Shown here piece by piece: positions 10,460 through 36,400 of a DNA stretch of 64,000 nt (its first letter is position 1; every line of letters begins with the position of its first letter). Below the pieces are notes generated by a model. That model did no database searches, was not told the origin of the DNA, and saw only the letters and a program-made list of their open reading frames with translations. Where the stretch lies: NCBI RefSeq assembly GCF_001447785.1, contig NW_015170280.1, positions 852,122 to 916,121 on the forward strand. The letters run 5' to 3'. Made by a program: the position numbers and the translations under genes. This DNA is from Gekko japonicus. Lineage: Eukaryota.

Positions 10460-11600
10460 GTTTGTCATGAGAAAGTTCAGGTCTGATTGGGTGCATCTGA
10501 ATGACACAGACAAAAGGAGCCACACCATTTGTTCACTGAATGCACACCTCACTCTTTCTTTGATGCTTGTCTTACACTTCAGAAGGGAAGCATTCCATCA
10601 TAAAAACTGTTTCTCTTCTGAAACATTTGTTGTCACAGTTCCATGTCAAGATAACTTCAGTAATCTGAGTTTTGGATTGGCTAAAAGGGCCCCAGTCTGT
10701 CCAAATCTTAGACATTAACAAGTTAAGCTTTTCTCTGGTTAGTTGTTAGTTTTGAGCAAGCCAGCTTCAGCTCTCCTGGAGGCAATGGGCTGATCCTGTC
10801 ATGGGTTAGACACAGGCCTGGCACACAAAGAGACTGGAAAGATGCCTGACTTCACCAATGGTAACTATAAATTAGGGTATAATGTTACTTAGATTTCTTG
10901 TTTTTTCTGCTCATTGCTTTTTTCTCTAGGAAATATTCTTGCACTCTTTAATTAAAAAAATACTTTGACTATACCTGGTTGTTCTGTACTTCAGAAGCTT
11001 CAATCTAATTCCAGTTCCTTAGGCTTAAAAGAGTCCATCTACCAAGTTAATTGTTGTGGAAACTCATTTCTGCAGGTAACCTACTTTGCACTGTTGGTTT
11101 TCTTAATTCCCAGTAGGGTTAGAAGCTTACCCCTTGGCTTCTGACTGTGTGGGTAGTTCAAAGTGCTGGTGGCAGACTACCATACTGGTGAGTGTGTGGA
11201 CACCCCCCCCCCATAGTTTTGTAATTTTGAGCTCTGCCCACCCGTAGCAAGGATCCCCCGGATTGGGAATTCTTGACAGCTGGAAGTCTTTAAAGGGTTC
11301 AGGGTATGTTGACTGACTCCACTCCGACACACTGGTTCAAGGAGGGATCCTTAGCCAATGCAGGACGGTGATGGTCACATGCATGAATACAAACAGAGCA
11401 AAGAGACCGTGGCATTAGGAGGAACAGGATTTATGTTGCATACTTAAAAACCACACCGCGCTGGGGAGAGAAAAACAGCTCCCACTTGAGGGCAGAAAAC
11501 GCAGGGGGTGCAGGAAGGCTGTTGAGAGAGAAAGTGCGGTAGGCATCTCTTGGGAGGAGGGTCCTCCCCCCCACACATCGGGGTGACCCTTCAGCTCAGC

Positions 11601-11748
11601 TTACATGATGCTTGCTGGAGCAAAGACGGGGGCGACGCACAGGGTGTCCGTGATCTCCCAGCCACAAGACAGCGGGGCGCATGTGCTCTCCCGATCCTCT
11701 TCTTCTGGCGGCAGCAGCAGCTTCCCCTGCAGGAACTGCACGGCTTCC
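11601..11748 (-). CDS. AZIN2: antizyme inhibitor 2, coding exon 9 (last; ...CAPLSCGWEITDTLCVAPVFAPASIM*)
   Basis: C-terminus LSCGWEITDTLCV..VFxPASIM is characteristic of AZIN2; CAG acceptor 11751-11749; TAA stop. Confidence 0.95.
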
Positions 11749-13518
11749 CTGCACCAACACCCAAAACAGAACAGAGCAGAACCCAATCAGCTCCCAGCTT
11801 GCTTTTCTGATCCAACAGTTGGCAGCTGCTTTGGGTCTCTCGTGTGGGGGAAAGGTGTTCGATAAATGCATTTAAACTAAATTTGTGGGGATCTCAGGCT
11901 AAATCTGACCTGTGCCCATTTGCACAGAGATGTACAGAATACCCTTTGGGGTTTTTCTAAAATTATTCAAAGGGTTCAAAGCCATTCACATACATTGCTT
12001 ACAATCAAGAAGAGACCCCTATGAGCACTGCTATCCCCGTTTTTCAGATCAGGGCTCAGAGGACTTGCCCAAATCTGCCTGGGAGAGTTCAGAACTGAGG
12101 CCAAGACAATTTAGGGGCACAGCTCAGCCTCTTCGAATAGAAACAGACATGTCTTCTCAGCAGTTTTTAAATAGAAGCAGTGCGGGGCCCTGAACTGGGC
12201 TGGGGCAGTGATGAGAACTCCAAGCCAAAGTTGCCAGCCTCCAGGTGGGGCCTGGAGATGTCCTGGAATTACAGCTTGCTCTGCAGACTACAGAGACCCA
12301 TTCCCCTGCAGAAAATGTCTGCTTTGGAAGGTGGACTCTTTGATATTATACCCTGCTGAGGCCCCTCCTCTCTGCAAACCCCACCCTCAAATCTACAGGA
12401 ATTCCCCAATCCAGACTTGGCAACCCTACCCCAAGACATTAGTAGCCGTGGAAGGGCAAAGAAGAGGCATCTGCTCTTTGGCAGGGTGCAGTTTCAACTG
12501 GCAAAAGCATCAGGGAGGGAGAGCTGAACGCCCTCTCTCCCTGTGTCATTGCCCCGATATGAATCAGGGCCGTTACACAGCAGCTATTTCCTTTAATAAG
12601 ATGTACAAAGTTTCAGACAGGGCAGAAGTTATACAAAAATGTTTAATGTTGCTGAAATGGATAAAGTATCATGTATGTTAAAAGGGAAAGATGAATCTAT
12701 TTTTGAAAAAAATTGGATCAAACTGTATAATTGGAAACTAAGCTTGAAGGGTTAGGCCAAAAAAGCTCAGTTATAGAGTATGGAAGTCAAGGCTGCCTTC
12801 CACAGCAAATTTGTATAAATTATCGACTATGTGTTTGTTTACGGCTTTGAAGGAAACTTAATAAAAATATACTAAAAAAAATAAATAAGATGCACCCCTG
12901 GATCACTCAGTACCACATCTCATCTGGCTGTTCACTACTTCCATGTTGTGCTGACTTGTGCCATTCGAAGTGGAATGCAATTAGGGTTGCCAGCTCTGAG
13001 CTAGGAAATTCCTGGAGGTTTCAGAGGTGGAGCCTTGGGCGGGTGGCATTTGGGGACAGGAGTGACCACAGCGGGTTACAATGGCATAGAGTCAGGATAG
13101 CTAGCAATCCAAAACAGTCCAGTGGAGCCTGAGTGGCGGGTGTTGCCTTCTGACACACTTCTGGTGGTGCCAGGGGGTGTGGCATATGCAAATAAGTTAT
13201 GCTAATACGTTATGCTAATGAGCTCCTGCACCTCTTTTTCTACAAAATGACCCCTGCATAGAGTTCACCCTCCAAAGCAGCCTTTTTCCCCAGGGGAAGT
13301 GATTTCTGTACCCTGGAGATCAGCTGTAATTCCAAGGGATCTCCAGGCCCCATCTGGTGGTTGGCAACCCCTAACTGGAATCTGCATTCCATGATGCAAA
13401 TGTGGCCCCTCCCACATCCAAGCCACCTTCCTTGCTTGGCTCTTTGACATTATACCCTGCTGATGTCCCTCCCCTCCCCCTTTCTATTCTCACAAGGAGT
13501 TCTATAAAATCCTCTCAC

Positions 13519-13733
13519 CAAGCCACCCTGGACATGGCATAGTAGATCCTCGCTGGCTGCGCTCCACTGAGGGAGGAGGAAGCTGTTCTTGTGTTGGCCC
13601 CCATGGTCTCAAAGATCAACCAGTCCCCAATGTGCAGTTCAGGGAGTTCCATGCTTTCTGCAATGCGGTCCAAGCCATCCGTGGTAGGCCCCCAGAGACT
13701 GCTGCTGTACAAGGGGGGATCGGGAGACAGCTT
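13519..13733 (-). CDS. AZIN2: AZIN2 coding exon 8 (KLSPDPPLYSSSLWGPTTDG...YAMSRVAW)
   Basis: ODC-family C-terminal domain; AG/GT boundaries; 215 nt, phase consistent. Confidence 0.95.
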
Positions 13734-13884
13734 CTGCATTTGGGGGGGGGGGAGTTAACAGACAGTAAAAGTGCTCGCCTGATCTGTGATTCCCTGTAGC
13801 CCAAAGGACAAGAGACGGACACAAAATAGCTGAAATTCTCAGACGCTGAATTTCTACATCCAATACCCATTTCTATGAAGATAT

Positions 13885-14020
13885 TCAGGTGGGTAACCAT
13901 GTTGGTCTGAAGCAACAGAACAAAGTTTGAGGCCAGTGGCACCTTTAAAAGCCATAAAGTTTAATTCTGGGTATAAGCTTTTCTGGTCTTAAAGGTGCAA
14001 CTGGACTCAACCTTTGTTCC
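13885..14020. mobile_element. Penelope-like element terminal fragment with inverted duplication
   Basis: GAACAAAGTTTGAGGCCAGTGGCACCTTTAA... inverted against ...TTAAAGGTGCAACTGGACTCAACCTTTGTTC; same motif recurs near 27875, 29830, 36055 and 48360. Confidence 0.6.
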
Positions 14021-15529
14021 ATTTCTATGGTTGCACATGGAGCCACATATCAGCACAGGTCCTACTGACGATATCAAAAGACCATGAGGCAACCAACAAT
14101 TTAAAGGCAGTGTCCAACAAAAATATGTATTTATTTATTTACTTAATTTAATTCAACAGGGGACCTTATTTGGATCAAAAGGTGGCATGTAATTTAAAAA
14201 AAAATAATGAATAAATAATTTTATACCCTGCCTTTCTCACCAATGGGGACCCAAAGTGGCCTACGTTGTTCTGCTCTCCTGTTTTAGGCTTTACAACATC
14301 TACCCTGTTAGGTGGGTTTGGCTGAGAGAGCTAGGGTTGCCAGACCCCTGGCCCCAGCAGCGGTTTCCCTGATTTGAGGGGCTCCTTCCCACTGCAGCCA
14401 GCTGGCTGACGGGGGAAGCGCCACTCAAAAGAGCGACCACCCAGCCACCCCTACTGCAAGATTTAAAGGGCCCTCCAGCTGGCCCTTTAAATCTTACAGG
14501 AGGGAGGGAGGGAGGGAGGAAGGAAGAGGGGTGGCCGCGCACCCGAATGTAGGCATGTGCGGACTCCGCCCCCGCTTCTTCCCAATAGCATTTAAAGGGT
14601 CCCTGTTGGGAAGGGCAGGGGCCGTGCACCTGCACTCCAAGCCACGAATTTGTGAATTTGTGGCTTGGAGTGCAGGCGTGTGCCCCCCCCCCCGCCTCTT
14701 GCCAAAAACATTTAAAGGGACCCTTTAAATGCTTTGGGCAAGAGGCTCCCCATGTGATGATGGCACTTCTGTGTGACATCATCACATTGGGGACATCCCC
14801 ACCCCTTACAGTAATGCCCCCCAAAAGTCCCACGCCTTTGAAGGACCTGGCGACCCTAGAGAGAGATGATTCCTGGAGATCACTTGCGCAAACAAGTCAA
14901 GCCATAAGCAAAAAGAAAGCACCATCAAAGTCGGCTACCAATTGGACCTAGGGGTGGAATGGGGACCAGCAGTCACTGCGAAGGGCAGTCCAGTAATTTC
15001 AGATTACCTCCAAAGACTGCATTTGGACCCATGGGGCAAGCCATGAATGACCCAAGGAGTGCTGCCCTGGCCCCACCCCCTGCCTGGGTTTTATCATAGA
15101 CCAAGTAGCACATTCAGTGATGAAGAGTTGAGCAGGATGCTTTTTTAAACATGTTCAATGTCTGCTTTTTCTTTCCACTCTTTACAAATAGTGTCGGCAG
15201 GCCCAGGCCCGCAGCTGCCAAGGCCCCCTGACTTCCATCCAGCCCCCAGGTCCCCCAGCTCTTTGGGCCACCTGGAGGACTCCCCACCGCTGCCCCTTCC
15301 CCAAGCATAGCTAGGCAGAGTGTGAATACTGCAAAAGTGAGTTTTTTAAAAATATATTTTTTTAATTTTGTGATGTCAGCCCCCCCTCCCCAAAATTACA
15401 GAATCCTGGCTACGGGCCTGTGTCGGTGCCTTGGGCATCTCTGGCAGAGATCAGAAAGCTCTCAGCCATGTCCCCAGCAAACCACTAAGCTGCCTCTCTG
15501 CTGACTGACAGTCTCACACATGAGCAGAT

Positions 15530-15745
15530 GCATGAAGCTGCCTTATACTGAATCAGACCCTTGGTCCATCGAGATCAGTATTGTCTATTCAGACTGGCAG
15601 CAGCTCTCCAGGGTCTCAGATGGAGGTCTTTCCGATCACCTACTGCCTGGTCCTTTTTAACTGAAGATGCTGGGGACTGAACCTGGGACCTTCTACATGC
15701 CAGTCAGGTGCTCTGTCACTGAGCTATGGTCTCCCCCTCTCCCTC
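15530..15745 (-). mobile_element. tRNA-derived SINE (Squam3-like); copies near 24108-24318, 46540-46630, 59745-59940
   Basis: tRNA-like head ATAGCTCAGTGACAGAGC...GTCCCAGGTTCAGTCCCCAGC on - strand; multiple dispersed copies. Confidence 0.75.
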
Positions 15746-15755
15746 CCTCCCTCCC

Positions 15756-16090
15756 TGTAATGTATTCAGCCTGACATGCCCGGACTTGCCCGGGCTGGCC
15801 AGGCACAATTCCTATGTTAGCTTCAGTCGAAAGACAAAGGATCCGGAGGATCCTAGCCGGCCCTATCAAAAGGGCTAGCTTCCCAGCCGGGAGACCAATG
15901 GTCACCCGGTTACTGTAAATAGCCTATCAGGAGTAGGGGGTGTGTTTAGGTATGCTTGGTGGCGGGTTTTCTGAACGTATATAAACCGGCCTGCGAGCCG
16001 GTCAGTTGTCTTTGTCCTGAACTAAATAAAGGTATGCTTAGCTGAAATCACTCTCCGTCTGCATACTTTTCACTCCCCAATTTATTTGAT
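15756..16090 (+). mobile_element. possible solo LTR
   Basis: Starts TGTAATG, contains TATATAAA then AATAAA, LTR-like length; 3' end and TSD not established. Confidence 0.35.
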
Positions 16091-16419
16091 ATATGGGAAG
16101 GAGGACAGAGAGTCGCAGAATGTGGCTCAGTGCTAGAGCATCTGCTTGCCATGAAGAAGGTTCCAGGCTCAGTTCTCCCTCCGTCCCCAAATCAGGGTCT
16201 GGAAGAATCAAAATGCAATCTAATCAAAGTCACAAACTAAGATTATTATTTAAAACTACACAGGTGTTCACATTATATAATTTCCAAGGTATTTGCTAGA
16301 TGAGATCAGCCGTCTCCCACGTTGCCACTCTAGAGAGTTTCCCAGATTCTGTGCCAAGCAAAGGTATGGTTCCCCCTGTGGTTCTGTATGAGAGACCCCA
16401 AGGGCAAAGTTCTCTTTAC

Positions 16420-16532
16420 CTTGTGCAAGACTGGGACTGGGCATGTGTTGTTGAAGATGACAGAGCTAAAGGAACCATAGACGCCATCATTCAGGTGGTA
16501 GACGAAGCTCTTTTTCCTTCTGGGGTCTTCCT
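16420..16532 (-). CDS. AZIN2: AZIN2 coding exon 7 (EEDPRRKKSFVYHLNDGVYGSF...LHK)
   Basis: NDGVYGSF ODC motif; AG/GT boundaries; 113 nt. Confidence 0.95.
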
Positions 16533-17208
16533 CTGGAAGATGGAGAGGAAGTGCAACACAGGGCAAGCTTGTGATGTCTTCGGATACTAAAAACGATGTC
16601 TAACAGAGGAGGGGCCCTTGGGTGATGTCTGCCCTGCGCATGGTGGTGCATCCCTCCTTGTCTTATGGCACCTTTTGACCAGTGGCAAGCATTCATCATC
16701 CTGGCTATGTGCAAAAAAGCCACAGTTTTGCAGGCTACCACCAATCTGGTGTGTGTGTGTGAGGCATTATTTTAGGGGCGGTGTTATGTGGAGTTCTGTT
16801 TTTTATTTTGAATTTCTAAGCTGCTTTCAGCTCCAGAAAAGTTAGGGGTGTAAATATTTTAATTAAATATATGAACCTTCCCTCCATGGAAAACCAGAAG
16901 TGTGGAAAACTGGAGCTTCTGCACATACCAATCAGGATGTGTGTGACTACCCCAACAGCAGCTCTCCAGGGCTGTTTAAGGAAGCAAAAAAAGCGGGGGG
17001 AGACTTAAGCCCCCCCCCCAAGTTGAGGTCCCCATCAGAACCCATAGTTTTGTCACTTGGGGGCTCATTCACAGGCCTCCCATCATAGATGGAACTAGGA
17101 GAGTGCCATGGGCAGAACAGAAAATACTGGGGTATCTGGGGCTCTGGGGAAAGCTGTTTTTTTTTTTTTTTTAGGTATAGGCACCAAATTTGCAGCAAAG
17201 CTGCTAGT

Positions 17209-17544
17209 AAAAAGGTAAAGGTAAAGGTTCCCCTGCTCGAAAGTCAGTCGAGTCCGACTCTAGGGCTGCGGTGCTCATCTCCGTTTCCAAGCCAAAGAGC
17301 CAGCGCTGTCCGAAGACGTTTCCGTGGTCATGTGGCCGGCATGACTAAACACAAAGGCGCACGGAACGCTGTTATCTTCCCACCGAAGTGGTACCTATTT
17401 ATCTACTTGCAATTTCTTGCTTTCGAACTGCTAGGTTGGCAGGAGCTGGAACTAGAGACGGGAGCTCACTCCATCATGCGGCACCCAGGTCTCGAACTGC
17501 TGAACTACTGACCTTCCACAGCCTGCAGTTCAGCGTCTTAACCT
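17209..17544 (-). mobile_element. Sauria SINE
   Basis: (ACCTTT)n tail, core GCAGTTCGAAAGC...GTAGATAAATAGGTACC, 11-bp TSD AAGCTGCTAGT (17198-17208, 17545-17555). Confidence 0.92.
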
Positions 17545-19052: not shown

Positions 19053-19111
19053 NNNNNNNNNNNNNNNNNNNNNNNNNNNNNNNNNNNNNNNNNNNNNNNN
19101 NNNNNNNNNNN
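19053..19111. other. assembly gap
   Basis: Run of N. Confidence 0.95.
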
Positions 19112-22265: not shown

Positions 22266-22428
22266 CGTCAGAGCCCAGTTGATCCAGGGGAACTTCCTTC
22301 TTGGCAACAACGTTGACCGCAAAGGTAAAGGCTGAATCCACGTAGTAGCGTCCCAGTTCTGCAATTATCTCCACCCCACAGCCTTCTGGGAAATGCAGGT
22401 CTAAGGCAGAGTTGACCACAGTTGTTGT
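22266..22428 (-). CDS. AZIN2: AZIN2 coding exon 6 ([30 protein letters not shown]...)
   Basis: AELGRYYV motif (AZIN2-type of ODC AEPGRYYV); AG/GT; 163 nt. Confidence 0.95.
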
Positions 22429-22704
22429 CTGATTAAGTAGGGAAACGAGTCCAAAATTCTGTTGTTACTGACATGCAGACATGAGGTCCAACTAAGTTCT
22501 CTAGCTTGTGCTCCAGAGCTGTAAAGTGAGCAGTGCACTCATCCCTTCTGTAACAGGATCTCCAATTAGGATGAGGCATGCATGCTCTTCAGTTAAATAT
22601 GCTAGGACTCACTGAGAACCTGCCACAAATGTATAGCTTCCCCTTCCCCTCAACATCTGTCAAGTGTTAACATTTTGGCTTGTATTCAGATCTTTCCTGA
22701 TTGG

Positions 22705-23677: not shown

Positions 23678-24433
23678 TTTCAGGGAACCCTGGGGGTGGT
23701 GCCATTTAGCTCCAAATGCTCTGTCTCGACATGCTGCACACTTACCCTTTTCCACCCCCTGCCAGTAAGAAAGCTGGGCCATCTGGGGGGGGGGGTAGGT
23801 CTTGCTCCCACCCCAATATGTCCCCAAGGGAGTGAGCGGCAGCCATCCCACTCTATGGGAGAAAGCACAGGGATATCGTGGGAGGGAGGAACCTCCCTGC
23901 CTTGGCACAAGAGGTAAGGGTCAGTTTTCGCCCCCTCTCAGCTGTGTCCCAGAATACCACCTGTCAAAACCCCTGAGACCAGAATCCTGAGTCTGCCCTG
24001 CCCTGGCCCTTCCACTACTCAGTCCCATCCTGGGCTCTGTTATTTGGTGTATGGGTGAAGCGTGTCTTGCTTAAGGCCACCAAAGAAACTTTTTGTCTTA
24101 GGGGGAACATATGAAGCTGCCTTGTACTGAATCTGGACCTTGGTCAGTCACAGTCAGTATTGTCTACCAGGACTGGCAGCAGCTCTCCAGGGTCTGAGGC
24201 TGAAGTCTTTCCCATTACCTACAGCCTGGTCCTTTTAACTGGAGATGCCAGGAACTGAACCTGGGACATCCTGCATACTGAGCAGATACTCTGCCATTGA
24301 GCCACAGACCCTCCCCCATGGCTCTTGCCCACCTTGATCCAACTCCCTCTCCCCTGCCCCATCTAGTAAAGGGTCTTTCTCCACACCAGACCATCTCCTG
24401 CATGAAAGAGGGAATGCTAGAATATACTTGTAC

Positions 24434-24599
24434 CTCTTCAAAGCGTCCTCTAGTCTCTTCGGCACCAGGAAATCCACCTCCAATACCCAAGAGGCACATT
24501 TTGTAGCCCAGCTCTGCACCCATTTTGAAGACCAGGTGAGCATCTGCTATGGATTGAGTGAAGATCTGAGGATCGGTACAGCCGCTTCTAATGTGGAAA
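24434..24599 (-). CDS. AZIN2: AZIN2 coding exon 5 ([11 protein letters not shown]...LGIGGGFPG...RFEE)
   Basis: GGGFPG glycine loop; TAG acceptor, GTACAA donor; 166 nt. Confidence 0.93.
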
Positions 24600-25047
24600 C
24601 TAGAAAAGAAGGCAGGTGGGTAACTGCGTTGTTTTTTGGAAGTGTTAATTCCACCACAGGCCTGAGTCTCTACTCTCCACTCTGTGAGGACCCTTCCTCA
24701 ACCTCATCCCCCTGCTGCTCATGGAGACCACCAAGGACCGAATACTGGCCACCACCTTGGGTGTACTCATGCCACATCCTTCTCCTTTTTCCTCAGCAGA
24801 GAGCTATCCCCCATTATTCTCCTCCATTCCTGAACATTCCGGTTCATCCCAATATGTCCTCCGTGGTTGTCCCTTCTTGCTTTTGGATAGGCATCTCAGA
24901 ATCAGGCCTTGGCTGCCACAGTGCGCTAGGGAGGGAGGGGAGAGGGAGGCCACGGCCTGGCTGGCCAGCCAGAGCACTTTTGCAAGCCAGAGGTGGGAAA
25001 TCAAAAGCCCCCTTTCCTTAATTCATGCAGGAAATTCTGCTACCTAC

Positions 25048-25182
25048 CTGACTCCGACCACCTCCACATTCATATCCTTTGCAGTCTCTAGCAGATGCCG
25101 GCAGGATTTCAGGGTGGCACCAAACCTCATAGTTGGATGGCCAGAGGATCTAGACTCATCAGTCGCTAGGCTCAAAATCATT
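25048..25182 (-). CDS. AZIN2: AZIN2 coding exon 4 (MILSLATDES...MRFGATLKSCRHLLE...VVGVS)
   Basis: Hand translation (absent from ORF track); CAG/GTAGGT boundaries; 135 nt. Confidence 0.93.
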
Positions 25183-26929
25183 CTGTGAAAAGATGGGGGG
25201 GGGGGTCACTGAATTTGGCTGGCTGGATGGCTGGATGGCTCAGGCTAGTACCTGGATAGGAGACAACCAAGGAGTTCTAGGGTTGCTATGTGGAGGCAGG
25301 CAATGGCAAATCACCTCTGTTTATGTTTTTGCCTTGAAAACCCCATGGGGTTGCCATAAATCAACTGTGACCTGACAGGATTTTCCAGCACCACTATTAT
25401 TATTCCCTCTGCTAAGGGGTTACTATTCATTTCACACCAAAAGTGTGTGAGGCGCTGTACACCTAGAAGCATAGAAGTCACACAGCCAACAGAGATGCTG
25501 CTTCACACTGGGCTGGGCAAAAGCCTCATATTCTGCACACGGGATGCTTTTTTAAATAAGATTTTCCTATCATTTTATTTGTTGATTGCTTCTCTTTCCT
25601 ATATGTCCAAGAACGCGGTTACTGGTGGACAGTGGGGCCGTGTGGGACAAAGACTTGCAGCTAGGAGATCTGAGCAGGAAAAAAAATCACCTGGTGGTAC
25701 TCTTCTTGGCTGCACCCCTTTGGCATTTGGGTGGGGAATACATATTCAAGTGTTTTCCCATATAAAAAAAACCCTGCTGACATTTAGCAAAAGATGTGAT
25801 ATTGAAACAGGAGTCACCATGGATTTCGCTCTTGTGGGGACAGCCACAGTGTCTCCACAATGTGAATAATTTTTCATTGGCTCCACTTATTTATTTATTT
25901 ATTTGTTAGATTTTTACCCTGCCCTCCCGCCAAAGTGACTCATGGCGGCTTACAGTAGTTAAAAACCAGTATACAATTAATAGAATATCAAGTCTAAAAT
26001 AATACAATCGATAAAATATCAACACACAACTTATTAAATTTAAGATTAAGATGTGGCGGCCATCTGTTATAAAGTACAAGTAGTTATGTGGAACGGTCAG
26101 TGTGGTCAGACTATTGAAACGCTTGCCGGAACTTATACCCTGCCTTTCTCCCCAGCAGGGACCCAAAGGGGCTTACATCATTCTCCACTCCTCCATTTTG
26201 TCCTTAAAAACAACCCTGACAGCTAGATTAGGCTGAGAGTGTGTGACTGATCCAAAGCTAACCCTGCGAGCTTTTGTGGCAGAGTAGTGATTTGAGCACC
26301 CTGGGTTTCCCCAATCCTAGTCCAACATTCTACTTACTACACCACACTGGGTAAACCATGCACAGTCAAAGCACATCGGCTGTCATTAAGACAACACATG
26401 CACGTTTATTCATTTAATTATTCATTCCTTACATTAGTGTATACTAATTTAAAAATAATGGGAAAATATGGGGAGAATAGGGAGGTGAGTTGATGACTGT
26501 GCAGGTAGCAGCCAATTAGCACTGTGCATGGTCAATTTCCTTTGCAAATTCACAAAACTGTTCCCACCCCCTCCCCCTAGAGCTCAAATCTGGAGAAACA
26601 ATGCTTGGTTTGTACATTATTTGATGCACTTCTGTAACAGCCCAACTACTCCTATAACATTACAGTTGCTCACACACTCCCATATCAAGGTGAAAACTTC
26701 AAACCTAGCCTTCTCCTTAACCTCCCAGTTCTTCTTTACAACCGTGAGGGCTAGAAACCTCTTTTCCCTGGAACCCTGATGGATCTGAACAAGGGCACTG
26801 TAACTTTCGTGATAATCAAAGGTCTAAGGTTCACAACTTTTGTTCTTGTTGCTCAAAGCTCTTCTGTTCATGGAAACGACCCTCCACCCCACTCCACCCT
26901 ATATCCCCACAAGTGCTGTGTATGCCTAC

Positions 26930-27102
26930 CTGGCAGATGGGTGGTTCCGCGCTACCTTCCCAAGCTCCACTTCATTATCAAAAGTCATCAGCTGCACCCC
27001 TTGGCTGGCTGCATACTTGATCTGGGAGATCTGCTTGCAGGGGCCTGTACAGATGATCCTGTTCGGTGGGACTCCAGCACTTTTCGCCAGTGCCAGCTCT
27101 GG
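26930..27102 (-). CDS. AZIN2: AZIN2 coding exon 3 ([10 protein letters not shown]...[12 protein letters not shown]...[11 protein letters not shown]...)
   Basis: PCKQ and TFD motifs; AG/GT; 173 nt. Confidence 0.95.
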
Positions 27103-27869
27103 CTGGAGGGAAAGCAAAAGGCATTGGAAGGGGTGGATTGACTGGGCACTATGAGGTTCAGTCAGGCCCTGGACTCCCTTGTCTCTGTGCCATCATGGGC
27201 AGAGTAAAAAGCAGGCATTTCAAGCCAAACATTACAGACCAGAATCCACCTGACCTGGAGGCCAGAGAATCCTCCTGACCAGGTGTGCTAGAGACCCACT
27301 GCTGCCCCACTACCTGCAAGGGAGCTCCCAGGCCAGCTATCACTCCTCCTTTTGAGACTTTCTTTCCATCCACTTCTTGTGGATTCCTGCCCCTGTAATG
27401 GCCTGCTAGCTGATTCCCTGATCTGTTCAGCCCTATCGGGTTCGAATGGATGGTGGGACCTTCTGAACGGCAAACCATGCCTCTGGTTTCCTGTCTGATC
27501 TCAGGCTTCCTCATCAGCTCTTGGGCCTCAGTCTTCCCAACACTTAGAATGAAAGCAGACATAATACAACAAAGACAAACATTCTCTCAAGACAAGCAGC
27601 AGACATCTGCCAGCCCTTTCCACTCCTGCTTCAGGGAGGCATCCCACTTCTTTTATTTTGAAAGGGTCAGGTGTACGTCATCAGTCTACATGTTCCAATT
27701 CTTCATCATATTTGGGGGGAAGAACAAAAACATTTTTGAAACAATTGCAACCCAGCTGCTGGGGATGTATGGAGACTAACTTATCAGCAGTATTCACAGC
27801 TGCCTTTTACTGCAGACTTGCAGAATTGAGATTGTTCATTTTTTCTGAAACCCCCGCCCCCCAGGAAAT

Positions 27870-28162
27870 AAAATTTGAGTCCAGTAGCACTTTCAAGACC
27901 AGCAAAAGTTTCCATGAGACAAAGCTCATTTTGTCAGATAAAAATGAGACAATCCATCGGTCCTTATATCCAGGTCAGAACACGGGACATCAAAAATCTC
28001 AAAACTCAGAAACCAGTGGGTGAACATTTCAGTATTCCAGGACATTTCATTGCTGACCCTAGAGTGGAAGGCAGTTCTACTACAGAGAAGCTTCAAAGGG
28101 AGATTACAATGTGAGTTTGCTGGACTAGAATACATCAAGTTCAGGACAATGGACACCCTAAG
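27870..28162 (+). mobile_element. Penelope-like element fragment (GIY-YIG endonuclease C-terminus), continues at 29383-29410 after the hAT insertion
   Basis: KPVGEHFSIPGH...VLLQRSFKGRLQCE translation typical of PLE GIY-YIG domains. Confidence 0.75.
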
Positions 28163-29374
28163 CAGGGCCGGCTCACCTGCTAGGCGAACTAGACATTCGC
28201 CTAGAGCGCGGGCTGCCCCTTAGGGCACCAAACTGGACTGGGGGAGTGGCAGCGGAGGAACCGAGGAGGAGGAAGACTCGTGAGCAGGGCTCCTCCGGTC
28301 GGAAGGGGAATCAAAGCAAAGTGATTTGTTTGTCACGCGCCCACCAGGGACAAAGACTCTGCTGTCGTTCGTTGCAAGACTGTGGCCTGCGTCTCTTTTG
28401 GGAAGAGAGGGGGGGCAAAGCCTCTTCTTCCGGGGTCAGTCCCATGGGAGCATCCGGTCTCCCCCGCCACGAATCAGAGCTCCCCCCCTCCCCAGCCCTC
28501 TCTCCAGCGAGGCACATGGGCGATGGAGGTGGGGAGGGACAGGCTTGTCTCAAGACAGGGCACATTTGTAAAAGAAACCCGGCAGGAGCGATGGAGCTGC
28601 TTGCCAAGCTGCAGACAGATCCAAGCCCACAAAAAGTGAGGCGTCCAAAGCGCCGCCTGCCACCCTCTTGCAGCTCTTCTTATGGGATTTCACCACCTCG
28701 TGAAACAGGAACGCTTCACCAGCTGCGCTCCTCAGCGCCTGCCTACCAGGGGTCTCTCCGGGGGCATCATGAAGCCTGTTGCTGGCCGGGCACGAAGGCG
28801 ACTTGCTCTGGCAGCAATGGGCACTGTTGTGTGCTCTCTGGCACCGTTGTGTTGCGTGTTCTCCGGCGCTGCACAGGGCCTGGCCCTTGGAGGAGGGGGG
28901 CACCTCCATTGTGCTCCGATCCCCCCCCAGTCGACCACGCTGAGCCAGGTGAGTGCTGCTGCAGCAGGCAAAGGGCGGGGGGAGGGCAGGGGGGCTGTCC
29001 GCCTTCGGGTCGCACCACCGTTGAGTCCGCTGCCTGCCTGGCCAGCCACCCACTCCGGCTTGCAGGCCAGGTGGAACTTCCCGGGGTGGCCTGATGGGCA
29101 GCGAGCAGACAGAAGCCGGGTACAGGCACTGACTGCAGACGCGCCGGGGACTGCTCGGGCCTGGGCTCTGCTCACGCACATCTCCCCCAGCGGGCTGGGC
29201 AAATGGGAAGCCGATCCGGGCAGGGGCGAGGCTAGCTTGTGGCACCTGGCGCCCCCCCCCAGGCGTGTTTTTGGGAGGTCTTTAGGCCCCACCGGGAGGT
29301 TGGCATCGCCTGGGGGGCACGGGTGCCACAAGCTGGCCTCGCCTAGGGTGCAGAAACACCTTGGGCCAGCCCTG
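28163..29374. mobile_element. non-autonomous hAT DNA transposon (1.2 kb, GC-rich)
   Basis: TIR CAGGGCCGGCTCA / TGGGCCAGCCCTG; 8-bp TSD ACCCTAAG (28155-28162, 29375-29382). Confidence 0.9.
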
Positions 29375-30703
29375 ACCCTAAGGCTGAATAGGGACATAGT
29401 ATTCTTATCCTTTTTTGGCATCAAGTTGCACCTGACTTATGGGGACTCCCATGGGGTTTTCAAGGCAAAAGACATTCAGAGGTGTTTTGCCATTGCCTGC
29501 CTCTGCATAGTAACTCTAGACTTCCTTGGTGGTCTTCCATCCAAGTAGTAACTAAGGCTGATCCTGCTTAGTTTCCAAGATGTGATGAGATGAGGTTAGC
29601 CTGGGCTACACAGGTCAGATTACAGATGCTTATTTTCTGCATTTCCCACCTCTGTGAATATCTCTGTGCATAACACCTAGCCCATTTTGCATTGTACTTC
29701 TGCATCCTGACTCCACCAGACCCTTCCTGGTAACACCTCTCCTATCTTCTGACCTGGATATAAATGCTGATGGATCTTCATTCTCATCTGGTGGTCTGTG
29801 AAGACAGCTTAGACCCTGGAAAATGTTATTGGTCTCGGAGGTGCTACTGGACTTAAGTTTTGTTTTACTACTACAGCCACCTGCAAAAGAAGAAATGACA
29901 CATCCATGGTGAATATCTTGAGGGTACTTTTGAAACATCCCCACAAAGGACATAAGTGTCTTTCCAACTTGAAACTGGACATTTGATGCTGGTGCAAAGA
30001 AGCACAAAAAGGAGAATTTATTTTGCCGTGGATAGTAGCTAGCAAAAGGACTTGGGGCGAGGGTTGTTTGAGATTTATGGATCATGATGGATCACCATTA
30101 GTCCATTAACATTTATATAATATTTATATGAGAAACCTATTTGTAGAAGATAACTAGCAACACATTTCATTAAAAAAGATAACTAGCAACACATTTCATT
30201 AAAAAATCATCAACACAATCTTTTACAAATGCTTTGTATGAACCAGTACTTGTTAGCAATATCAATGCAGATGTTTTTGTTCACACATGTGGATTAGTTC
30301 TCCCTTCCCTTCTGTGCTGCTACGATCATGATATAGATAGCAGAACAGGACTGGGGTTGTGTATGCCCTGTGGTGAACAACTATATCTAATAATAAAGTG
30401 TCCAGACTCCACAACAGACACAAAAGCAGAACTAGGCCTCCCCCATACTCGGGGAATGCCCTGGAAATGCAGGGTGGGGTGGGGATTTTTTTTTTTGCCA
30501 TCAAGTCTCAACTGACTTGGCAACCCCATAGGGTTTTCAGGACAAAAGATGAACAGAGGTGGTTTCCCATTGCCTGACTCTGCATAATAATATTGGACTT
30601 CCTTGGTGGTCTCCCATTTATGTACTAACCAGGGCTGACCTTTGCTTCTGAAGAGATCAGGCTAACCTGGGCTATCAAGGTCAAGGTAGAAAAATAAGAC
30701 TTT

Positions 30704-31294
30704 GGGCTTTTCTGCATCCTCACTTTCCTCGCTTGTGTGTTCCTGTTGTTTCAGCCTTCTGAACATGTTTTGCTCCCTCTAGTGGTCAATTTGATATATT
30801 ACTTTATGGCTGTGATCAGATGAGCACCTTGATTCACTGCTGTTGCTTCTCCCCAATGGATTTAAAGTGCTCATTCAGATGGCAACATCTGTCTCTCATC
30901 CCACAGTCATCAGCTTCCTGTGCTCACACCAGACTTTCCCAACATTGCAGAAAGTCCAGTATTTATGTATCCAACCGGTTTCACAGCACTCCTATGGATG
31001 TGTCATTGCTCTTGCGTGGGGAAGCCATTTGGGAAGTCAGATTGCTGACTTCCTGTTTTGCTGCCATTTTGGGGGGTGTTACCAACCTGCGCATAAGCAG
31101 ATAAGTGCTTTTTCGTCCCGTCCCCCCCCCCCCAGCCTATGTCTGGCATATCTCCATGAAGGTTTTTATGCTGCACACAGAGTGATATTATATTGAATCG
31201 ACCACTAGAGGGAGCAAAACATATGCAGAGCAGTAAAAAATACCCAAAGCAACAAGAACACACAAAAGAGAAAAATGAGAATATGGATAAGCCC
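30704..31294. mobile_element. MITE (Harbinger-like termini) with subterminal 23-bp perfect inverted repeat
   Basis: GGGCTTTTCTGCA...TGGATAAGCCC ends; ATGTTTTGCTCCCTCTAGTGGTC (30765-30787) is the exact reverse complement of 31200-31222. Confidence 0.65.
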
Positions 31295-31567
31295 TCTGTA
31301 AAGTATGTAAAAGAAGAATTATTTTAAAAAAAATGTCTGAGGAGGATTGAGCATGCCCCAGAAGGGAGAGAATGTTGAGAGTCAGTTAAAGAGAAAAGTT
31401 GTGGAGGAGGGGGAGCCTGCTTAAGCACTGAATGCTTATACAGCTCCTGGAGGAAGAACGGGGGCGGGGAGGTTGCAAATTGCTTCTCCCTCCTGCAATT
31501 CCCCACCGTGCGTACTATTAAAGTAAAATCCAAATTCCAAGGGGCCTCAGTTTTGCAATGATCCTAC

Positions 31568-31741
31568 CTTATTGGCACATCCAAATCCAACCCCCAGTCC
31601 TGCCAGCATCTGGACCACTCCCTTACTGCAGTTACACTTTGGAGCGTAGAAGGGCTTGACACGGGGCAAAGCTTTGAGGAGGCGCAAATGTTTCTTCACC
31701 ACATCTCCAAGATCTGCCACAAAGAAGGCTTCTTGGCTACC
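31568..31741 (-). CDS. AZIN2: AZIN2 coding exon 2 ([18 protein letters not shown]...PFYAPKCN...GFGCANK)
   Basis: Hand translation; PLP-lysine motif FYAxKCN; CAG/GTAGGA; 174 nt. Confidence 0.95.
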
Positions 31742-32409
31742 CTGGAGACCAGGAAGGAGATTTAGCAGTCTTATTTCTGGGGCAAATCACCCAATTTATT
31801 TTAAAATTGTTATATCCACTTATTCAGACAGTTATCATTTAAGGCAGACGACAGTACATGCGGTCACCACTGTTAAGAGTTGAATGTATTTCACTGAACT
31901 TCACTTGCAGTAGTTCCCGATTATAAACCCGTACTCAGGGCCTAACTCTGAGAAGTGATGAGAGTGGGGTAGCCTGGGCCATCCAAGTTAGGGCAATATC
32001 TAACTACATGATGTGTTTTTCTTGCATCCTTCCTTCCCAATCAAACGTGTGCTCCAAGTTCCCAGGTATGCAGGGCTGATTTCAATCAGGACTGTGGGAA
32101 GCAGGGGCTTAAGCCTTCCCTCCACATCATTTCCCCAACCTGAAATCCCCCTCCCTTACTATTTGCCCTTTTGGGGAAACCGTGTTTACCAATGAGCTGC
32201 ATATAAGCTGCCCCATTGGGGCAAATAACACGTTCATTGCAGGTGGGGGGGAAAGCATGGGGGAGACACCACCCCCCGCATGCCAAACCCTGACCTCTTC
32301 ATATTCCACCCCCAAAATCACCAGGTATTTCCCAACCCAGAGCTGGCTATCTCTCTCCTTGCCTTGCTAAGACTCAGCTGACCTGGCCATGCTGATGCTT
32401 TTGTAAGTT

Positions 32410-32945
32410 TGTGGCTGGACTACCGGATGGCACTCTACACAGGGCTGCCCCTGAAGACAATCCAGAAACTGCAAGTGATTCAGACTGCAGCAGCCGGATT
32501 ATCATCAGGGCCCAGGGGCTTGCTGACAGGAACATACCCATCTTAAAAGAACATAATTAGCTGCCAGTTTTTTCCACTTCAAATTTTCCTTTAAAACTCT
32601 TCATGGCCTTAGCATCCACATATCTAACAGGCTGCCTCCCCTCATCTGTCTTTGTGCAACACCTTCACACCAGCCGTTCCCCCATTTAAAGTAGCCTGCC
32701 TGGTGTCAACCAGAGCCTCTGCATTTTCCATTATAGTTCCCACTCTTCACAAATTTTCAGGAAGTGCTGCAAGACCATCTTATTCACCAGGGCTTTTAAT
32801 GGGGGTATAACCTGCAGGCATCTTTTGGCTGGAGGAAGGTTATTGAGAGTCTTTTATTATGTTCACTTTGCCATGTTTTTGTAATGTTTTAATCATAAAC
32901 TATGAGGAAAGACAGGATATAAATATTTACATAAATAAATCAATA
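32410..32945 (+). mobile_element. L2 LINE 3' fragment, decayed
   Basis: Translates to ALYTGLPLKTIQKLQVIQTAAA...PILKE, typical L2 ORF2 C-terminus; ends in (TAAA)n. Confidence 0.75.
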
Positions 32946-33318
32946 AGTGATGAAAACCATTGATGATCACTCTTATTTGGCATAACTTATTTCCCTCCTT
33001 CTTATCACGGGGAAGAGCAAGGAGTGGAATACCAACTGAAGCCCCACTTCTGGAAAACTTTTGGGTTTAATTATTCTTCTGACTTCAGAGGTCTTATAAC
33101 ACATTGCGCACAATGCATTTAAGCATATTTTCAGAACCCTAAAGGCTAGAAACATTTCTGTAGTCTTGGGATTCTCGTGAAGCTCCCCTCTCTTTCGGTG
33201 ACATGTCCCTCTGCTGCTGACCACCTGGAGAACTCTTCAGCTATGTCCTCCCTTGACCCCTTTTCTGCTGCCGCTACCACCTGTTGGCAGAGGGGAGCGT
33301 GCATGAAGAGCCTCTTAC

Positions 33319-33417
33319 CCTCTGGGAAGCCTCCTTTAGGAGGCTCTCCATGAGATCCTTCATGGTGAAACCCTCCTCCACCATTGTGACATCCAGTTCA
33401 TCCAAGTAGCCGGCCAT
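33319..33417 (-). CDS. AZIN2: AZIN2 coding exon 1 (MAGYLDELDVTMVEEGFTMKDLMESLLKEASQR); exon begins at 33490
   Basis: MAGYL...MVEEGF N-terminus of AZIN2; in-frame upstream TAA; GTAAGA donor; acceptor TTTCACAG at 33491; nine exons sum to 1386 nt = 461 aa + stop. Confidence 0.95.
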
Positions 33418-36400
33418 CGTCACCACCGAGGGAGAATCTTGTATCTCAAATCTCTGTTGGAGGGGGTGTAGTTTTTAAGTATGCAACACACTGTGAAAGG
33501 AACAAAAAAGGAAGGATAGTTAAGCCCTTCTCGAGCCATCCAAGCCAAGGGAAGACATTTAGCCGTGGCTTTCCCACTTTCTACCTGAGCATTTTCAAGT
33601 TCTTCTTCTCTTCCAACCATAAAGGCTAGAAAATTATTTCCTTTACTTGAAAACTGAACTTTTTAGGGTTATGATGACCTGGTACTAACTGGTTTGGTGT
33701 AGTGGTTAGAGTGTGGAAATAACCTCTAGGAGGCACAGGTTTTAATCCCCGCTGTGCCATGGCAGCTTGCTAGGTGATCTTGGGCCAGTCAAATACTCTC
33801 TGCCTAACTTTCCTGAGAATGCTGTTGTCAGGAGAAAATAAAGAGGAGAACAATGTAAGTGGCTTTAGGTCCCCATTGAGGAGAAATGCAGATTATAAAT
33901 GAAGTAAATAAAATAAACAAATACCCTAGCCAACTTTTAAAATGCGCAGTTCAAGCTCCTTTTTCTTATCTGGGGCTGCGACCACATGCACAATTAGACC
34001 CGCCATAGGCATGAATGCTGGGCAGATTTAAAGGATGTGATCAGACAACAACATCTGGGAAGTGCTCCAAAGCCATTGGCAACCTGTTCTGCTTTGCTGC
34101 AGAAGCGAAGTTAAAAGGCACCAGGGAAAATCTGGTAGAAAACGTGTTGCGACGGGCCACAGATGGAGTTTCCTGTCTGATCACTCCAGTGCACTCTCAT
34201 GGTGTCGGGATGGTCTGATCAGGCCATTCCAACTCTGTGCCATGTTTTTTCCCCCTCTTCTCAGTATGTGCATCATCACAAACTCCATAGGGAGCCCTCA
34301 GTGCGGAGGCGCGGTTCATTGATTCCTCGTTTAAGCTCGTCGGAGACAAACGGCAAAAAAAACGCCGACTCACGTGTGGTTGCGTCTGATCACGCAGTGG
34401 CGGGCTGTGTCTGCAGCTTCCCAGGACTGTGTGATCACGCAACTGCAGGTCAAATTTCTCTGAAGGAAATAACCTTGCTCCCCCCCCCCACCCCCTTTTC
34501 TTTTTGGCATGTGTGACCACAACCTTTGACTCTACCCCTCAGTGCCATTATGAAAGGAAAACCAAACCAGAAATGTATATATTTTTAAAACTTCTGCTTT
34601 CAGGTAAACAGCACTGGTGAAGAAGAAACAAGAAATCAGAAAGTTAGCAACTGTTATATCATCAGGTACTTTTATGTGGATATCTGTGACGTGATAGCAA
34701 GAATAATACAGTCTTCCAAGTGGGATATCTGCAAATAACTCTCAGGAACAGGGAGATCTCATTCCCCATCAGCGCCCACTTGTTCCACTCTTTGAGCTCT
34801 GCCTAATTCCTCCACCACTGGCTCCTTCTCCCTCCCCTGCCCTCCTGTCATCTCTTCCCCCTCTTCCCCCACTGCCATCTCTCTCTCCCCCCCCCCATCT
34901 CGCTTATTGCCATCTCTCTCTCTCTCTTTCTCTCCCTCTCTCTTTCATCCTGATCCTACTGCCTCTTACTCCTGCCCACCCGCCTCCTCTGCTGCACACT
35001 GTGGCATCTTCTACTGCAGTTGCTATGCAACCCCCAAAATGGCATGGTAAGATCTCGTGACATAGCATTGTGAGATCTTGTTTTTCGTTTAACAGTTGGG
35101 GTTTTTAAATCTCCTCACATTTTTTTATTTTTCAGAGCTTTTCTGTAAACTTGGGGATATCCCTAGGTTTGTAGAGACAGATCTCCCCTACCTGTACACG
35201 GCCTACTTAGACAGATTTTTTGATCTGCACTCTTGGACCATGTTCAGAATAAGATACAAAGATTGTGCCAAGGAATCTTTGTTGAATTAATGTATTAATA
35301 ATAAGTGGGTTTCAATACATAGAAGGCAGTGTAATGTTTTGTTTTGTTTTAAATATGTCTGTTTGTGGTTGTCAATGATGAAGTATTCCATATTTTGCTG
35401 AGACATGTGTATAGTAATAGGTGCTTTCCACCACTCTTTTGGTAAGCAAAGATGGGATTTGTGCATGCAGTTCAGACAAACAACATTGGGGTCACATGAT
35501 GAGAGAGAACTCTGGCCCCAGAACTTCTAATCTTGGAGCAGGTCCACCAAATATGATGAGGGCCGTCTTTTCCACACACCCTCCATCAAAGTTCAGATTT
35601 ATTTGCTGAGACCATTTAAGACTATTGGATGGGAGGTACTCATACTTTGGATACAGTTTCATTAATACTGAGACAGCTTGATATTAACAGTTGTGCTCTC
35701 CAAATTTCATTTCAAGTCTCCTTGGTAAGGGGTTCCTCAAAACCTCTTTCCCAGAGTCCCACACACTTTGGAGGAGTCTTCCAAAAGAGTGACCCTAATG
35801 TTTGAAGACATAGGAGACTGCCCCTCTACATAGATTAGACTCTAACTGATCAACTCTCTAAAATGGGTCAAGTCTCTGCTTATTGAGGGGGGGACTGGTG
35901 TTTAGCAGAAATTAGCTATGCAGATATTGATACCATGGGACATGAGTCCCTTCCATTTTGGTGCTTAATTCTCCCATGGTTAATATTATGCTGTGCGGCA
36001 GGATACCACAGAGCCTGTTCATCTTGTTGTGATATCCCAGTTTTCAGATAGATTTGAGTCCAGTAGCACCGTAGAGACCAACACAAATTTGAGGGTATAA
36101 GCTTTCAAGAGTCAAGGCTCCCTTAATCAGATACGAGCAGTTTTCAGAGTTGCACAATTGAGATGCCTGACTAAAACCAGGTAAATATTCAATTAACAGC
36201 TCAATCAAACTACACAATCTCATCTATCTTTCTCAGACTTCACTTGTATTTGAGCTGGATGAGTTATTGATATGAGGCCTGTTCAATTTAGTTGCCATAC
36301 CAATTTTTCCAAGGACTTTCTCCCCATTACTTTTTTTTCTTGGTTAAGCCATTTTAGGTATTTTGGTTTCTCAGCATTGTATAGTATTGTACCAAGGTGA

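What the first reader, a model, noticed from the sequence alone, without database searches (positions are those of the whole stretch)
11432..33490. AZIN2 5'UTR and 3'UTR carry a 26-nt perfectly complementary pair: candidate RNA-duplex mRNA circularisation switch
Seen: the first 26 nt of the ATG-containing exon (33490-33465; mRNA UGUGUUGCAUACUUAAAAACUACACC) are the reverse complement of 3'UTR segment 11457-11432 (GGUGUGGUUUUUAAGUAUGCAACAUA), about 145 nt after the stop. All 26 positions pair. The only two DNA-level differences both give G:U wobbles in the sense mRNA but A:C mismatches on the other strand, as expected if pairing is selected at RNA level. Neither arm lies in a recognisable repeat, and the arms are 22 kb apart in the genome but flank the CDS once spliced. 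The 5' arm starts exactly at the splice acceptor and ends 47 nt before the AUG. Inference: the helix closes the mRNA into a loop, could block 40S scanning, and could be polyamine-sensitive, because polyamines stabilise duplex RNA and ODC/antizyme/AZIN mRNAs are known for polyamine-dependent translational control. I recall conserved UTR structures being noted for vertebrate ODC-like genes without an assigned function, so novelty needs a literature check.
Basis: partly seen in the sequence, partly recalled or inferred. Interest (0 to 1): 0.9.

Follow-up and report, generated by a model that had tools for sequence, protein, structure and literature searches.

The report
AZIN2 mRNA end-to-end 26-bp complement
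In a lizard-type AZIN2 gene, the first 26 letters of the start-codon exon are an almost exact reverse complement of a stretch in the 3' untranslated region; the match is real and far beyond chance and could close the messenger RNA into a loop, but I could not test whether it is a selected switch or a harmless copying accident.

Summary
Minus-strand 33490-33465 and 11457-11432 pair at all 26 positions in the sense RNA (24 Watson-Crick, 2 G:U; -38.2 kcal/mol).

- **Not chance, not a repeat.** The match is sharply bounded and unique in the window. No transposon family covers either arm.
- **Gene.** It is a squamate AZIN2 with nine coding exons. The N gap lies in an intron, between exons that match consecutive residues of the ostrich protein.
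- **Both arms should be in the mature mRNA.** The acceptor position is shared with a bird. No poly(A) signal lies between the stop codon and the 3' arm.
- **New here.** The 5' arm is at least partly ancestral. Its first 9 nt fit bird and horse AZIN2 leaders, so the 3' arm is probably the younger partner.

Whether the helix is selected remains open. The G:U argument is weak (chance about 0.11-0.25), and both changes are C-to-U on the sense strand. Polyamine sensing has no support.

My odds are about 0.4 for a selected translation-restraining helix and about 0.38 for a neutral inverted micro-copy.

The parts
33465..33490 (-). 5' arm: the first 26 nt of the ATG-containing exon (5'UTR)
   Evidence: The first 9-14 nt fit bird and horse AZIN2 leaders.
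11432..11457 (-). 3' arm in the 3'UTR, starting 144 nt after the stop codon
33491..33516 (-). Polypyrimidine tract and AG acceptor directly upstream of the 5' arm
   Evidence: Read. The same exon start is inferred in Tympanuchus, where three isoforms converge at it.
33415..33417 (-). AZIN2 start codon (A at -3, G at +4), 47 nt after the 5' arm
11601..11603 (-). AZIN2 stop codon TAA
33322..33417 (-). Coding part of the ATG exon (approximate 3' limit)
   Evidence: tblastn against ostrich AZIN2, residues 1-32
31568..31741 (-). Coding exon 2 (approximate)
26929..27099 (-). Coding exon 3 (approximate)
25050..25184 (-). Coding exon 4 (approximate)
24431..24601 (-). Coding exon 5 (approximate)
22266..22437 (-). 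Coding exon 6, the last one before the N gap; ends at ostrich residue 302
19053..19111 (.). Assembly gap, inside the intron between coding exons 6 and 7; not filled
16420..16533 (-). Coding exon 7, the first one after the gap; starts at ostrich residue 303
13518..13754 (-). Coding exon 8 (approximate)
11604..11747 (-). Coding part of the last exon (AZIN2-type C-terminus)
11430..11435 (-). CATAAA, a weak poly(A)-signal variant overlapping the end of the 3' arm; a GU-rich stretch follows at 11407-11386
10947..10952 (-). ATTAAA, the only common-type poly(A) signal within 2 kb after the stop; the likely 3' end of the mRNA

Best explanation
The two arms are parts of one AZIN2 mRNA. There they can form a 26-bp helix that ties the 5'UTR, 47 nt before the AUG, to the 3'UTR, 144 nt after the stop. 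The helix closes a loop of about 1.55 kb that holds the whole coding sequence.

The 5' arm is the older partner. It sits at a splice acceptor shared with birds, and its first 9-14 nt are shared with bird and horse AZIN2 leaders. The 3' arm most likely began as a short inverted copy of that exon start. It has since been kept because the helix restrains expression.

The most likely mode is a barrier to the scanning 43S complex. That would hold the mRNA in a closed, poorly translated state until a helicase or a first ribosome opens it. Such a duplex could also serve as a landing site for double-strand RNA-binding proteins.

Shown: the complementarity, its uniqueness, the gene model, and the energetics. 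Inferred: that both arms are in the mature RNA, that the helix forms in cells, that it is selected, and that it lowers translation. I treat polyamine dependence as unsupported.
For: - **Pairing and uniqueness.** The pairing is exact and statistically unique.
- **Energetics.** The duplex is -38.2 kcal/mol. It stays at about -23 kcal/mol after paying 4.4 and 10.8 kcal/mol to open the local structure. The full helix survives in the co-fold of both contexts. The best 5'UTR-3'UTR duplex is 6.9 sd better than 300 dinucleotide shuffles.
- **3' arm in the mRNA.** No poly(A) hexamer lies between the stop and the 3' arm. The candidates are CATAAA at the arm's end and ATTAAA 649 nt after the stop.
- **Acceptor.** Three Tympanuchus isoforms with different upstream exons converge exactly at the homologous exon start. 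A helix shared by all leader isoforms therefore has to begin at the acceptor.
- **Ancient 5' arm.** The exon start TGTGTTGCA fits the lizard, bird and horse. Shuffles reached the observed alignment score in 8/500 (bird) and 15/500 (horse) trials.
- **Differences.** Both keep pairing as G:U in the sense RNA only.
- **Precedent.** The p53 mRNA has a 5'CS/3'CS duplex that controls translation (bioRxiv 10.1101/2022.07.24.501301).
Against: - No orthologous 3'UTR could be read, so conservation and covariation of the helix are untested.
- No RNA reads were available, so the acceptor, the poly(A) site and the helix itself are inferred.
- A perfect, bulge-free 26-bp helix looks young rather than long maintained.
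- The bird 5' arm differs at 7 or more of 26 positions. An amniote-wide helix would need as many compensations.
- The G:U pattern has a chance probability of about 0.11-0.25.
- By published thresholds (own knowledge, Kozak), -38 kcal/mol is only a moderate barrier to scanning.
Confidence: 0.4

Rival explanations
1. It is a neutral by-product. A short inverted templated insertion, from break repair or replication template switching (possibly using the gene's own transcript), copied 26 nt of the exon start into the 3'UTR in a squamate ancestor. The two C-to-U changes since then are ordinary drift. Any helix in the mRNA is incidental and without selected function.
For: - The copy is sharply bounded with random flanks.
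- The original match was apparently perfect. At position 21 the 3' arm and the bird agree on C; at position 2 the bird and horse agree with the 5' arm.
- Only 2 of 26 positions differ, which suggests a fairly recent event.
- Germline inverted templated insertions of 25 bp or more are a documented class of mutation (PMC8421209).
Against: - Documented events copy templates within about 100 bp. Here the template is 22 kb away.
- I saw no junction microhomology.
- The copy would have to land by chance in the 3'UTR of the same gene, on the pairing strand, and start within 0-2 nt of the exon boundary. My rough estimate for such a joint placement is about 1e-5 per event.
- Both later changes happen to preserve pairing.
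Confidence: 0.38
2. The 3' arm matters mainly for 3'-end biology. It carries a CPE-like UUUUUAAGU and a CAUAAA hexamer followed by a GU-rich stretch. Pairing with the 5' arm would mask or unmask proximal polyadenylation, or cytoplasmic polyadenylation, in testis or brain.
For: The motifs are at 11450-11442, 11435-11430 and 11407-11386. No AATAAA occurs within 2 kb after the stop.
Against: These are motif matches only. They are short, common and unvalidated. No 3'-end data were available.
Confidence: 0.07
3. It is a DNA-level element: two inverted copies of a protein-binding site that flank the coding region, for example loop anchors or a shared enhancer motif.
For: The copies are in inverted orientation around the coding region. 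The exon-start sequence is conserved across amniotes.
Against: - No known motif was recognised.
- Conservation of the 5' copy is equally well explained by splicing or leader functions.
- A 26-bp identical site is far longer than typical binding sites.
- The G:U-compatible changes would be irrelevant at DNA level.
Confidence: 0.05
4. It is pure chance complementarity.
For: The scan covers very many windows, and the features were picked out after the fact.
Against: - 0 of 100 shuffles gave the match.
- The duplex z-score is -6.9.
- The expected number of such helices between one 73-nt leader and one 650-nt 3'UTR is about 1e-9 (my own calculation under uniform base composition).
Confidence: 0.02

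Closest known systems
p53 mRNA 5'CS/3'CS long-range duplex (Chen and Kastan 2010, as described in bioRxiv 10.1101/2022.07.24.501301)
   Same: Complementary sequences in the 5' and 3' UTRs of one cellular mRNA form a double-stranded region that controls translation.
   Different: The p53 duplex is imperfect, with an 8-nt bulge, and works through RPL26 and nucleolin, as shown by mutation. Here the helix is a perfect 26 bp, no protein partner is known, and nothing has been tested.
Flavivirus genome cyclisation sequences (review PMC7999817)
   Same: Pairing between the 5' and 3' ends closes a long RNA into a pseudo-circle and switches its use.
   Different: Those are viral genomes. The helices are shorter and conserved with covariation, and they serve replication rather than cap-dependent translation of a cellular mRNA.
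ODC mRNA 5'UTR/3'UTR co-operation (Lorenzini and Scheffler 1997, cited in PMC5872159)
   Same: In a paralogue of the same family, the two UTRs jointly set translational efficiency.
   Different: That effect was attributed to a cellular factor, not to a defined base-paired helix. It is a mammalian ODC, not AZIN2.
AZIN1 leader controls: uORF/uCC and 5'UTR G-quadruplex (PMC6313458)
   Same: Polyamine-linked translational control acts through the leader of an antizyme-inhibitor mRNA. In the window, one frame through the 5' arm ends ...LPRW-stop 2 nt before the AUG.
   Different: Those mechanisms act within the 5'UTR alone and involve no 3'UTR partner. Their presence in AZIN2 was not established here.
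Germline inverted templated insertions (MMB-TI, PMC8421209)
   Same: A short inverted copy of 25 bp or more of a nearby sequence with sharp ends.
   Different: Described templates lie within about 100 bp and show junction microhomology. Here the partner is 22 kb away and no microhomology is seen.

Membership tests
5'UTR-3'UTR cyclisation duplex of a cellular mRNA (p53 type) | Complementary sequences in the 5'UTR and 3'UTR of the same sense transcript | tested here: met
   All 26 positions pair in the sense RNA. The arms are placed by the gene model.
5'UTR-3'UTR cyclisation duplex of a cellular mRNA (p53 type) | Both sequences present in the mature mRNA | not testable with these tools
Indirect support only: a conserved acceptor and no poly(A) signal before the 3' arm.
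5'UTR-3'UTR cyclisation duplex of a cellular mRNA (p53 type) | Conservation or covariation of both arms across species | tested here: inconclusive
   The start of the 5' arm is shared with bird and horse. No orthologous 3'UTR was obtainable.
5'UTR-3'UTR cyclisation duplex of a cellular mRNA (p53 type) | Effect on translation shown by single-arm and compensatory mutants | not testable with these tools
   This needs an experiment.
Transposon-derived inverted repeat pair (TIRs, or SINE pairs in opposite orientation) | Arms belong to a repeated family and similarity extends beyond a short core | tested here: not met
   There are only two copies in 64 kb, flank complementarity is random, and a 600-nt and a 500-nt context are both unique.
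Transposon-derived inverted repeat pair (TIRs, or SINE pairs in opposite orientation) | Target-site duplication outside the arms | tested here: not met
   The outer flanks differ (read).
Inverted templated insertion (MMBIR or theta-mediated end joining) | Short inverted copy with sharp ends | tested here: met
Inverted templated insertion (MMBIR or theta-mediated end joining) | Template close by, with microhomology at the junctions | tested here: not met
   The partner is 22 kb away. No junction microhomology is seen. The described class uses templates within about 100 bp.
Inverted templated insertion (MMBIR or theta-mediated end joining) | Empty site in outgroup species | not testable with these tools
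   No orthologue DNA was available.
Inverted repeats that drive back-splicing (circRNA) | Arms lie in the introns flanking the circularised exons, with a donor downstream of the 3' arm | tested here: not met
   Both arms are exonic, and the 3' arm is in the terminal exon.
Polyamine-responsive uORF/uCC of ODC homologues (AZIN1 type) | Conserved upstream coding region ending in a Pro-Pro-Trp type stall motif | tested here: inconclusive
   One frame through the 5' arm ends ...KILPRW-stop 2 nt before the AUG. The upstream exon and start codon are unknown.
Rfam cis-regulatory RNA families | Match to a curated covariance model | tested here: not met
   No match at E up to 1 in 10000-12000. The 5' region was not sent, see the report.

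The most novel reading that the evidence does not exclude
The 26-bp helix is conserved, with compensatory changes, across squamates or more widely. It works as a bistable closing switch of AZIN2 mRNA whose stability, and hence AZIN2 synthesis, responds to polyamine concentration. That would give the polyamine circuit a feedback sensor built from an RNA duplex between the two UTRs.
Probability: 0.1. Interest if true: 0.85.

Novelty: new member of a known kind. Interest (0 to 1): 0.55.

Why it matters
Defined base-paired contacts between the two UTRs of a cellular mRNA are very rare. The p53 case is described as "very uncommon among Eukaryotes".

AZIN2 sits in the polyamine circuit, where nearly every component (ODC, antizyme, AZIN1) has unusual translational control, while none is described for AZIN2 in the papers searched. 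A selected closing helix would add a new control point and a clean, mutable model of mRNA circularisation by RNA-RNA pairing.

If it proves to be a neutral micro-copy, it is still a neat natural example of how such helices can arise in one mutational step.

Tried and rejected
- **Transposon or TIR origin: rejected.** No family, no extension and no target-site duplication.
- **Chance: rejected**.
- **Helix extending across the exon junction into an upstream leader exon.** I scanned every GT donor upstream of 33490. The best runs (8-9 pairs, G:U allowed) are at the level expected by chance, and none lies in the likely exon 1 region.
- **Masking of the acceptor in the pre-mRNA: set aside.** The 3' arm is transcribed 22 kb later than the acceptor (inference).
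- **Back-splicing: rejected.** Both arms are exonic.
- **Rfam** found nothing in 10000-12000.
- **Searches that came back blank, which says nothing either way:**
  - a peptide search with the stop-free 61-codon frame of the 3'UTR;
  - a metagenome scan with the last coding exon;
  - findings searches by words.
- **Tools unavailable.**
I did not adopt it.
Full report
**Observation**

On the minus strand, 33490-33465 begins right after a long polypyrimidine tract and AG. Positions 11457-11432 lie in the sequence after the AZIN2 stop codon.
- The 26-mer occurs only at these two places in the window with up to 3 mismatches, in opposite orientation and with 2 mismatches. None of 100 dinucleotide shuffles gave this.
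- In the sense RNA every position pairs: 24 Watson-Crick pairs and 2 G:U, at arm positions 2 and 21. The energy is -38.2 kcal/mol. The opposite strand would have two A:C mismatches and -32.1 kcal/mol.
The stop TAA is at 11603-11601 with 143 nt between it and the arm. The AUG is at 33417-33415, 47 nt after the arm.

**Gap and gene model**

- Ostrich AZIN2 (458 aa) aligns exon by exon over its whole length to nine minus-strand exons, from 33417 down to 11604.
- The exon ending near 22266 covers residues up to 302 and is followed by GTAGGT. The exon starting near 16533 begins at residue 303 and is preceded by ...ttccag.
- The gap 19053-19111 therefore lies inside that intron. No coding exon is missing, and the gap bears on neither arm. 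I did not fill it.
- The closest named protein is a Varanus komodoensis AZIN2 fragment, 76-86% identical over the two best-matching exons. Birds are about 60% identical. The window is therefore squamate AZIN2.
- I handled the exons one by one by reference. I did not build or search a joined spliced mRNA or protein model.

**Are both arms in the mature mRNA?**

This could only be inferred.
- *5' side.*
  - AK2 exon 1 lies on the plus strand at about 56975-57080, within a CpG-rich stretch. It is head-to-head with AZIN2, so the AZIN2 promoter is probably there and the ATG exon is internal.
  - Three Tympanuchus AZIN2 isoforms with different upstream sequences converge exactly at the residues that correspond to the window's exon start. 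The split codon ends in T in all three. So the acceptor position is shared with a bird, and several alternative leader exons join it.
- *3' side.*
  - No poly(A) hexamer lies between the stop and the 3' arm.
  - The only candidates within 2 kb are CATAAA, overlapping the last bases of the arm (11435-11430, followed by a GU-rich stretch), and ATTAAA at 10952-10947.
  - Either choice keeps the arm in the RNA.

**Not a repeat**

- Of 72 inverted pairs seeded on 14-mers, this is the only short, high-identity pair that is neither low-complexity nor part of a longer transposon match. Its flank complementarity is 0.25, which is random (compare).
- A 600-nt and a 500-nt context around the arms hit nothing else in the window beyond chance 12-13-mers.
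- There is no target-site duplication and no junction microhomology.

**Energetics**

- The 5' arm is unpaired in the local minimum-energy fold. Opening it costs 4.4 kcal/mol, and opening the 3' arm costs 10.8 kcal/mol.
- That leaves about -23 kcal/mol net, and the co-fold of both contexts keeps all 26 pairs.
- The best duplex between the 73-nt leader part and the 671-nt 3'UTR scores -68.5, against -40.8 +/- 4.0 for 300 shuffles, a z-score of -6.9.

**A glimpse of other species**

Orthologue DNA was out of reach. However, some predicted N-terminally extended isoforms translate the homologous leader.
- Back-translation of the Tympanuchus peptide aligns without gaps to the first 37 nt of the window's exon. 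Shuffles reached that score in 8 of 500 trials.
- The Equus peptide (C-V-A-Y-F...) aligns to the first 14 nt, with 15 of 500 shuffles reaching the score. Both alignments start at exon position 1.
- The first 9 nt, TGTGTTGCA, fit all three lineages, so the 5' arm is at least partly ancestral to amniotes.
- The bird differs at 7 or more of the 26 positions.
- The two differences between the arms can be polarised:
  - At position 21 the bird (a Pro codon) and the 3' arm both imply C, so the T in the 5' arm is derived.
  - At position 2 the bird and horse support the G of the 5' arm, so the U in the 3' arm is derived.
- The original match was therefore probably 26 of 26 Watson-Crick. Both later changes are C-to-U on the sense strand.

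**Weight of the G:U argument**

- A random substitution in a helix gives G:U in a given strand about one time in three, or one in two if it is a transition.
- Two such hits therefore have a chance of about 0.11-0.25. This is suggestive, not strong.
- The fact that the helix starts at the exon boundary is better explained by selection. With alternative upstream exons, only sequence from the acceptor onward is common to all isoforms. An arbitrary DNA copy would end within 0-2 nt of the boundary in only a few percent of cases (my estimate).
- Against long-term selection stands the bulge-free perfection of the helix, which looks young.

**Mechanism**

If both arms are in the RNA, a helix of this strength should form in at least part of the molecules.
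- It lies 47 nt before an AUG in good context and after the leader exons. The most direct consequence is a barrier to scanning and a closed, poorly translated state.
- The arms are about 1.55 kb apart, so re-closing would be slow once ribosomes load. That would give switch-like behaviour (inference).
- By published thresholds (own knowledge, Kozak's hairpin experiments), -38 kcal/mol is a moderate barrier, not an absolute one.
- Binding of double-strand RNA-binding proteins, or editing, are alternatives.
- The 3' arm also carries a CPE-like UUUUUAAGU and the CAUAAA hexamer, so masking of 3'-end signals is a minor rival.
- Nothing links the helix to polyamines beyond the gene's pathway.

**Literature**

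- Papers holding AZIN2, UTR and translation describe no such element.
- A review of antizyme inhibitors reports leader controls only for AZIN1: a uORF and a G-quadruplex.
- The nearest precedent is the p53 5'CS/3'CS duplex, called very uncommon among eukaryotes. Others are flavivirus cyclisation and a functional co-operation of ODC UTRs attributed to a cellular factor.
- Inverted templated insertions of 25 bp or more exist as germline variants, but the described ones have templates within about 100 bp.

**Limits**

- I worked on it only in local scripts on the closed machine, and I ran Rfam on the 3' region alone.
- A peptide search of the 3'UTR frame and a metagenome scan were blank.
- No human sequence was used.

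**Verdict**

This is a real, unusual and well-placed complementarity.
- Function is plausible but unproven: about 0.4 for a selected helix that restrains translation, and about 0.38 for a neutral micro-copy.
- The polyamine-switch reading is about 0.1.
- One comparative alignment of squamate AZIN2 UTRs would settle most of this.

Noticed in passing
window 33420-33490, minus strand: One reading frame through the 5' arm stays open across the exon start and ends ...KILPRW-stop just 2 nt before the AZIN2 AUG. This recalls the Pro-Pro-Trp ending of the AZIN1/ODC upstream conserved coding region. There is no AUG in the 73-nt leader part of this exon.
   Followed up: partly
window 11386-11450, minus strand: The 3' arm contains UUUUUAAGU (CPE-like, 11450-11442) and CAUAAA (11435-11430), followed by a GU-rich stretch (11407-11386). 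This may be a weak proximal poly(A) site. No AATAAA occurs within 2 kb after the stop.
   Followed up: partly
window 11461-11477, minus strand: A polypyrimidine-AG motif that looks like a splice acceptor sits 3 nt upstream of the 3' arm, inside the 3'UTR.
   Followed up: no
window 56975-57080, plus strand: AK2 exon 1 (Met...GPPGAGKGTQ) lies within a CpG-rich stretch at 56.5-57.5 kb, head-to-head with AZIN2. The AZIN2 promoter is probably there, about 23 kb upstream of the ATG exon.
   Followed up: partly
window 41648-44408, minus strand: A Ty3/gypsy-type retroelement remnant lies in the AZIN2 leader intron. It has gag with a CCHC knuckle (43164-44408) and an integrase core (41648-42322).
   Followed up: partly
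window 9139-9792, minus strand: A reverse-transcriptase (RVT_1) fragment lies about 1.1 kb beyond the likely AZIN2 poly(A) signal.
   Followed up: no
window 10334-10374: A tight cluster of ETS-like (CCGGAAGTG), CRE (TGACGTCA) and GC-box (GGGGCGGGG) motifs in CpG-rich sequence. It resembles a housekeeping promoter, about 0.6 kb beyond ATTAAA.
   Followed up: no
window 1803-2322: A near-perfect palindrome: arms 1871-1994 / 2133-2256 at 98% and 1803-1872 / 2253-2322 at 91%. It lies next to the first N gap (1336-1464) and may be a hairpin-forming mobile element.
   Followed up: no
proteins P0043 and P0270-P0282 (Equus AZIN2 isoforms): Predicted N-terminally extended horse, donkey and zebra isoforms read through the homologous leader. 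They contain a variable poly-Gln run, from a CAG repeat, between the conserved exon start and the AUG.
   Followed up: partly
window 16552-16560, minus strand: The 9-mer TGTGTTGCA of the exon start recurs in the polypyrimidine region just upstream of coding exon 7. BLAST rates this as a chance-level hit.
   Followed up: no
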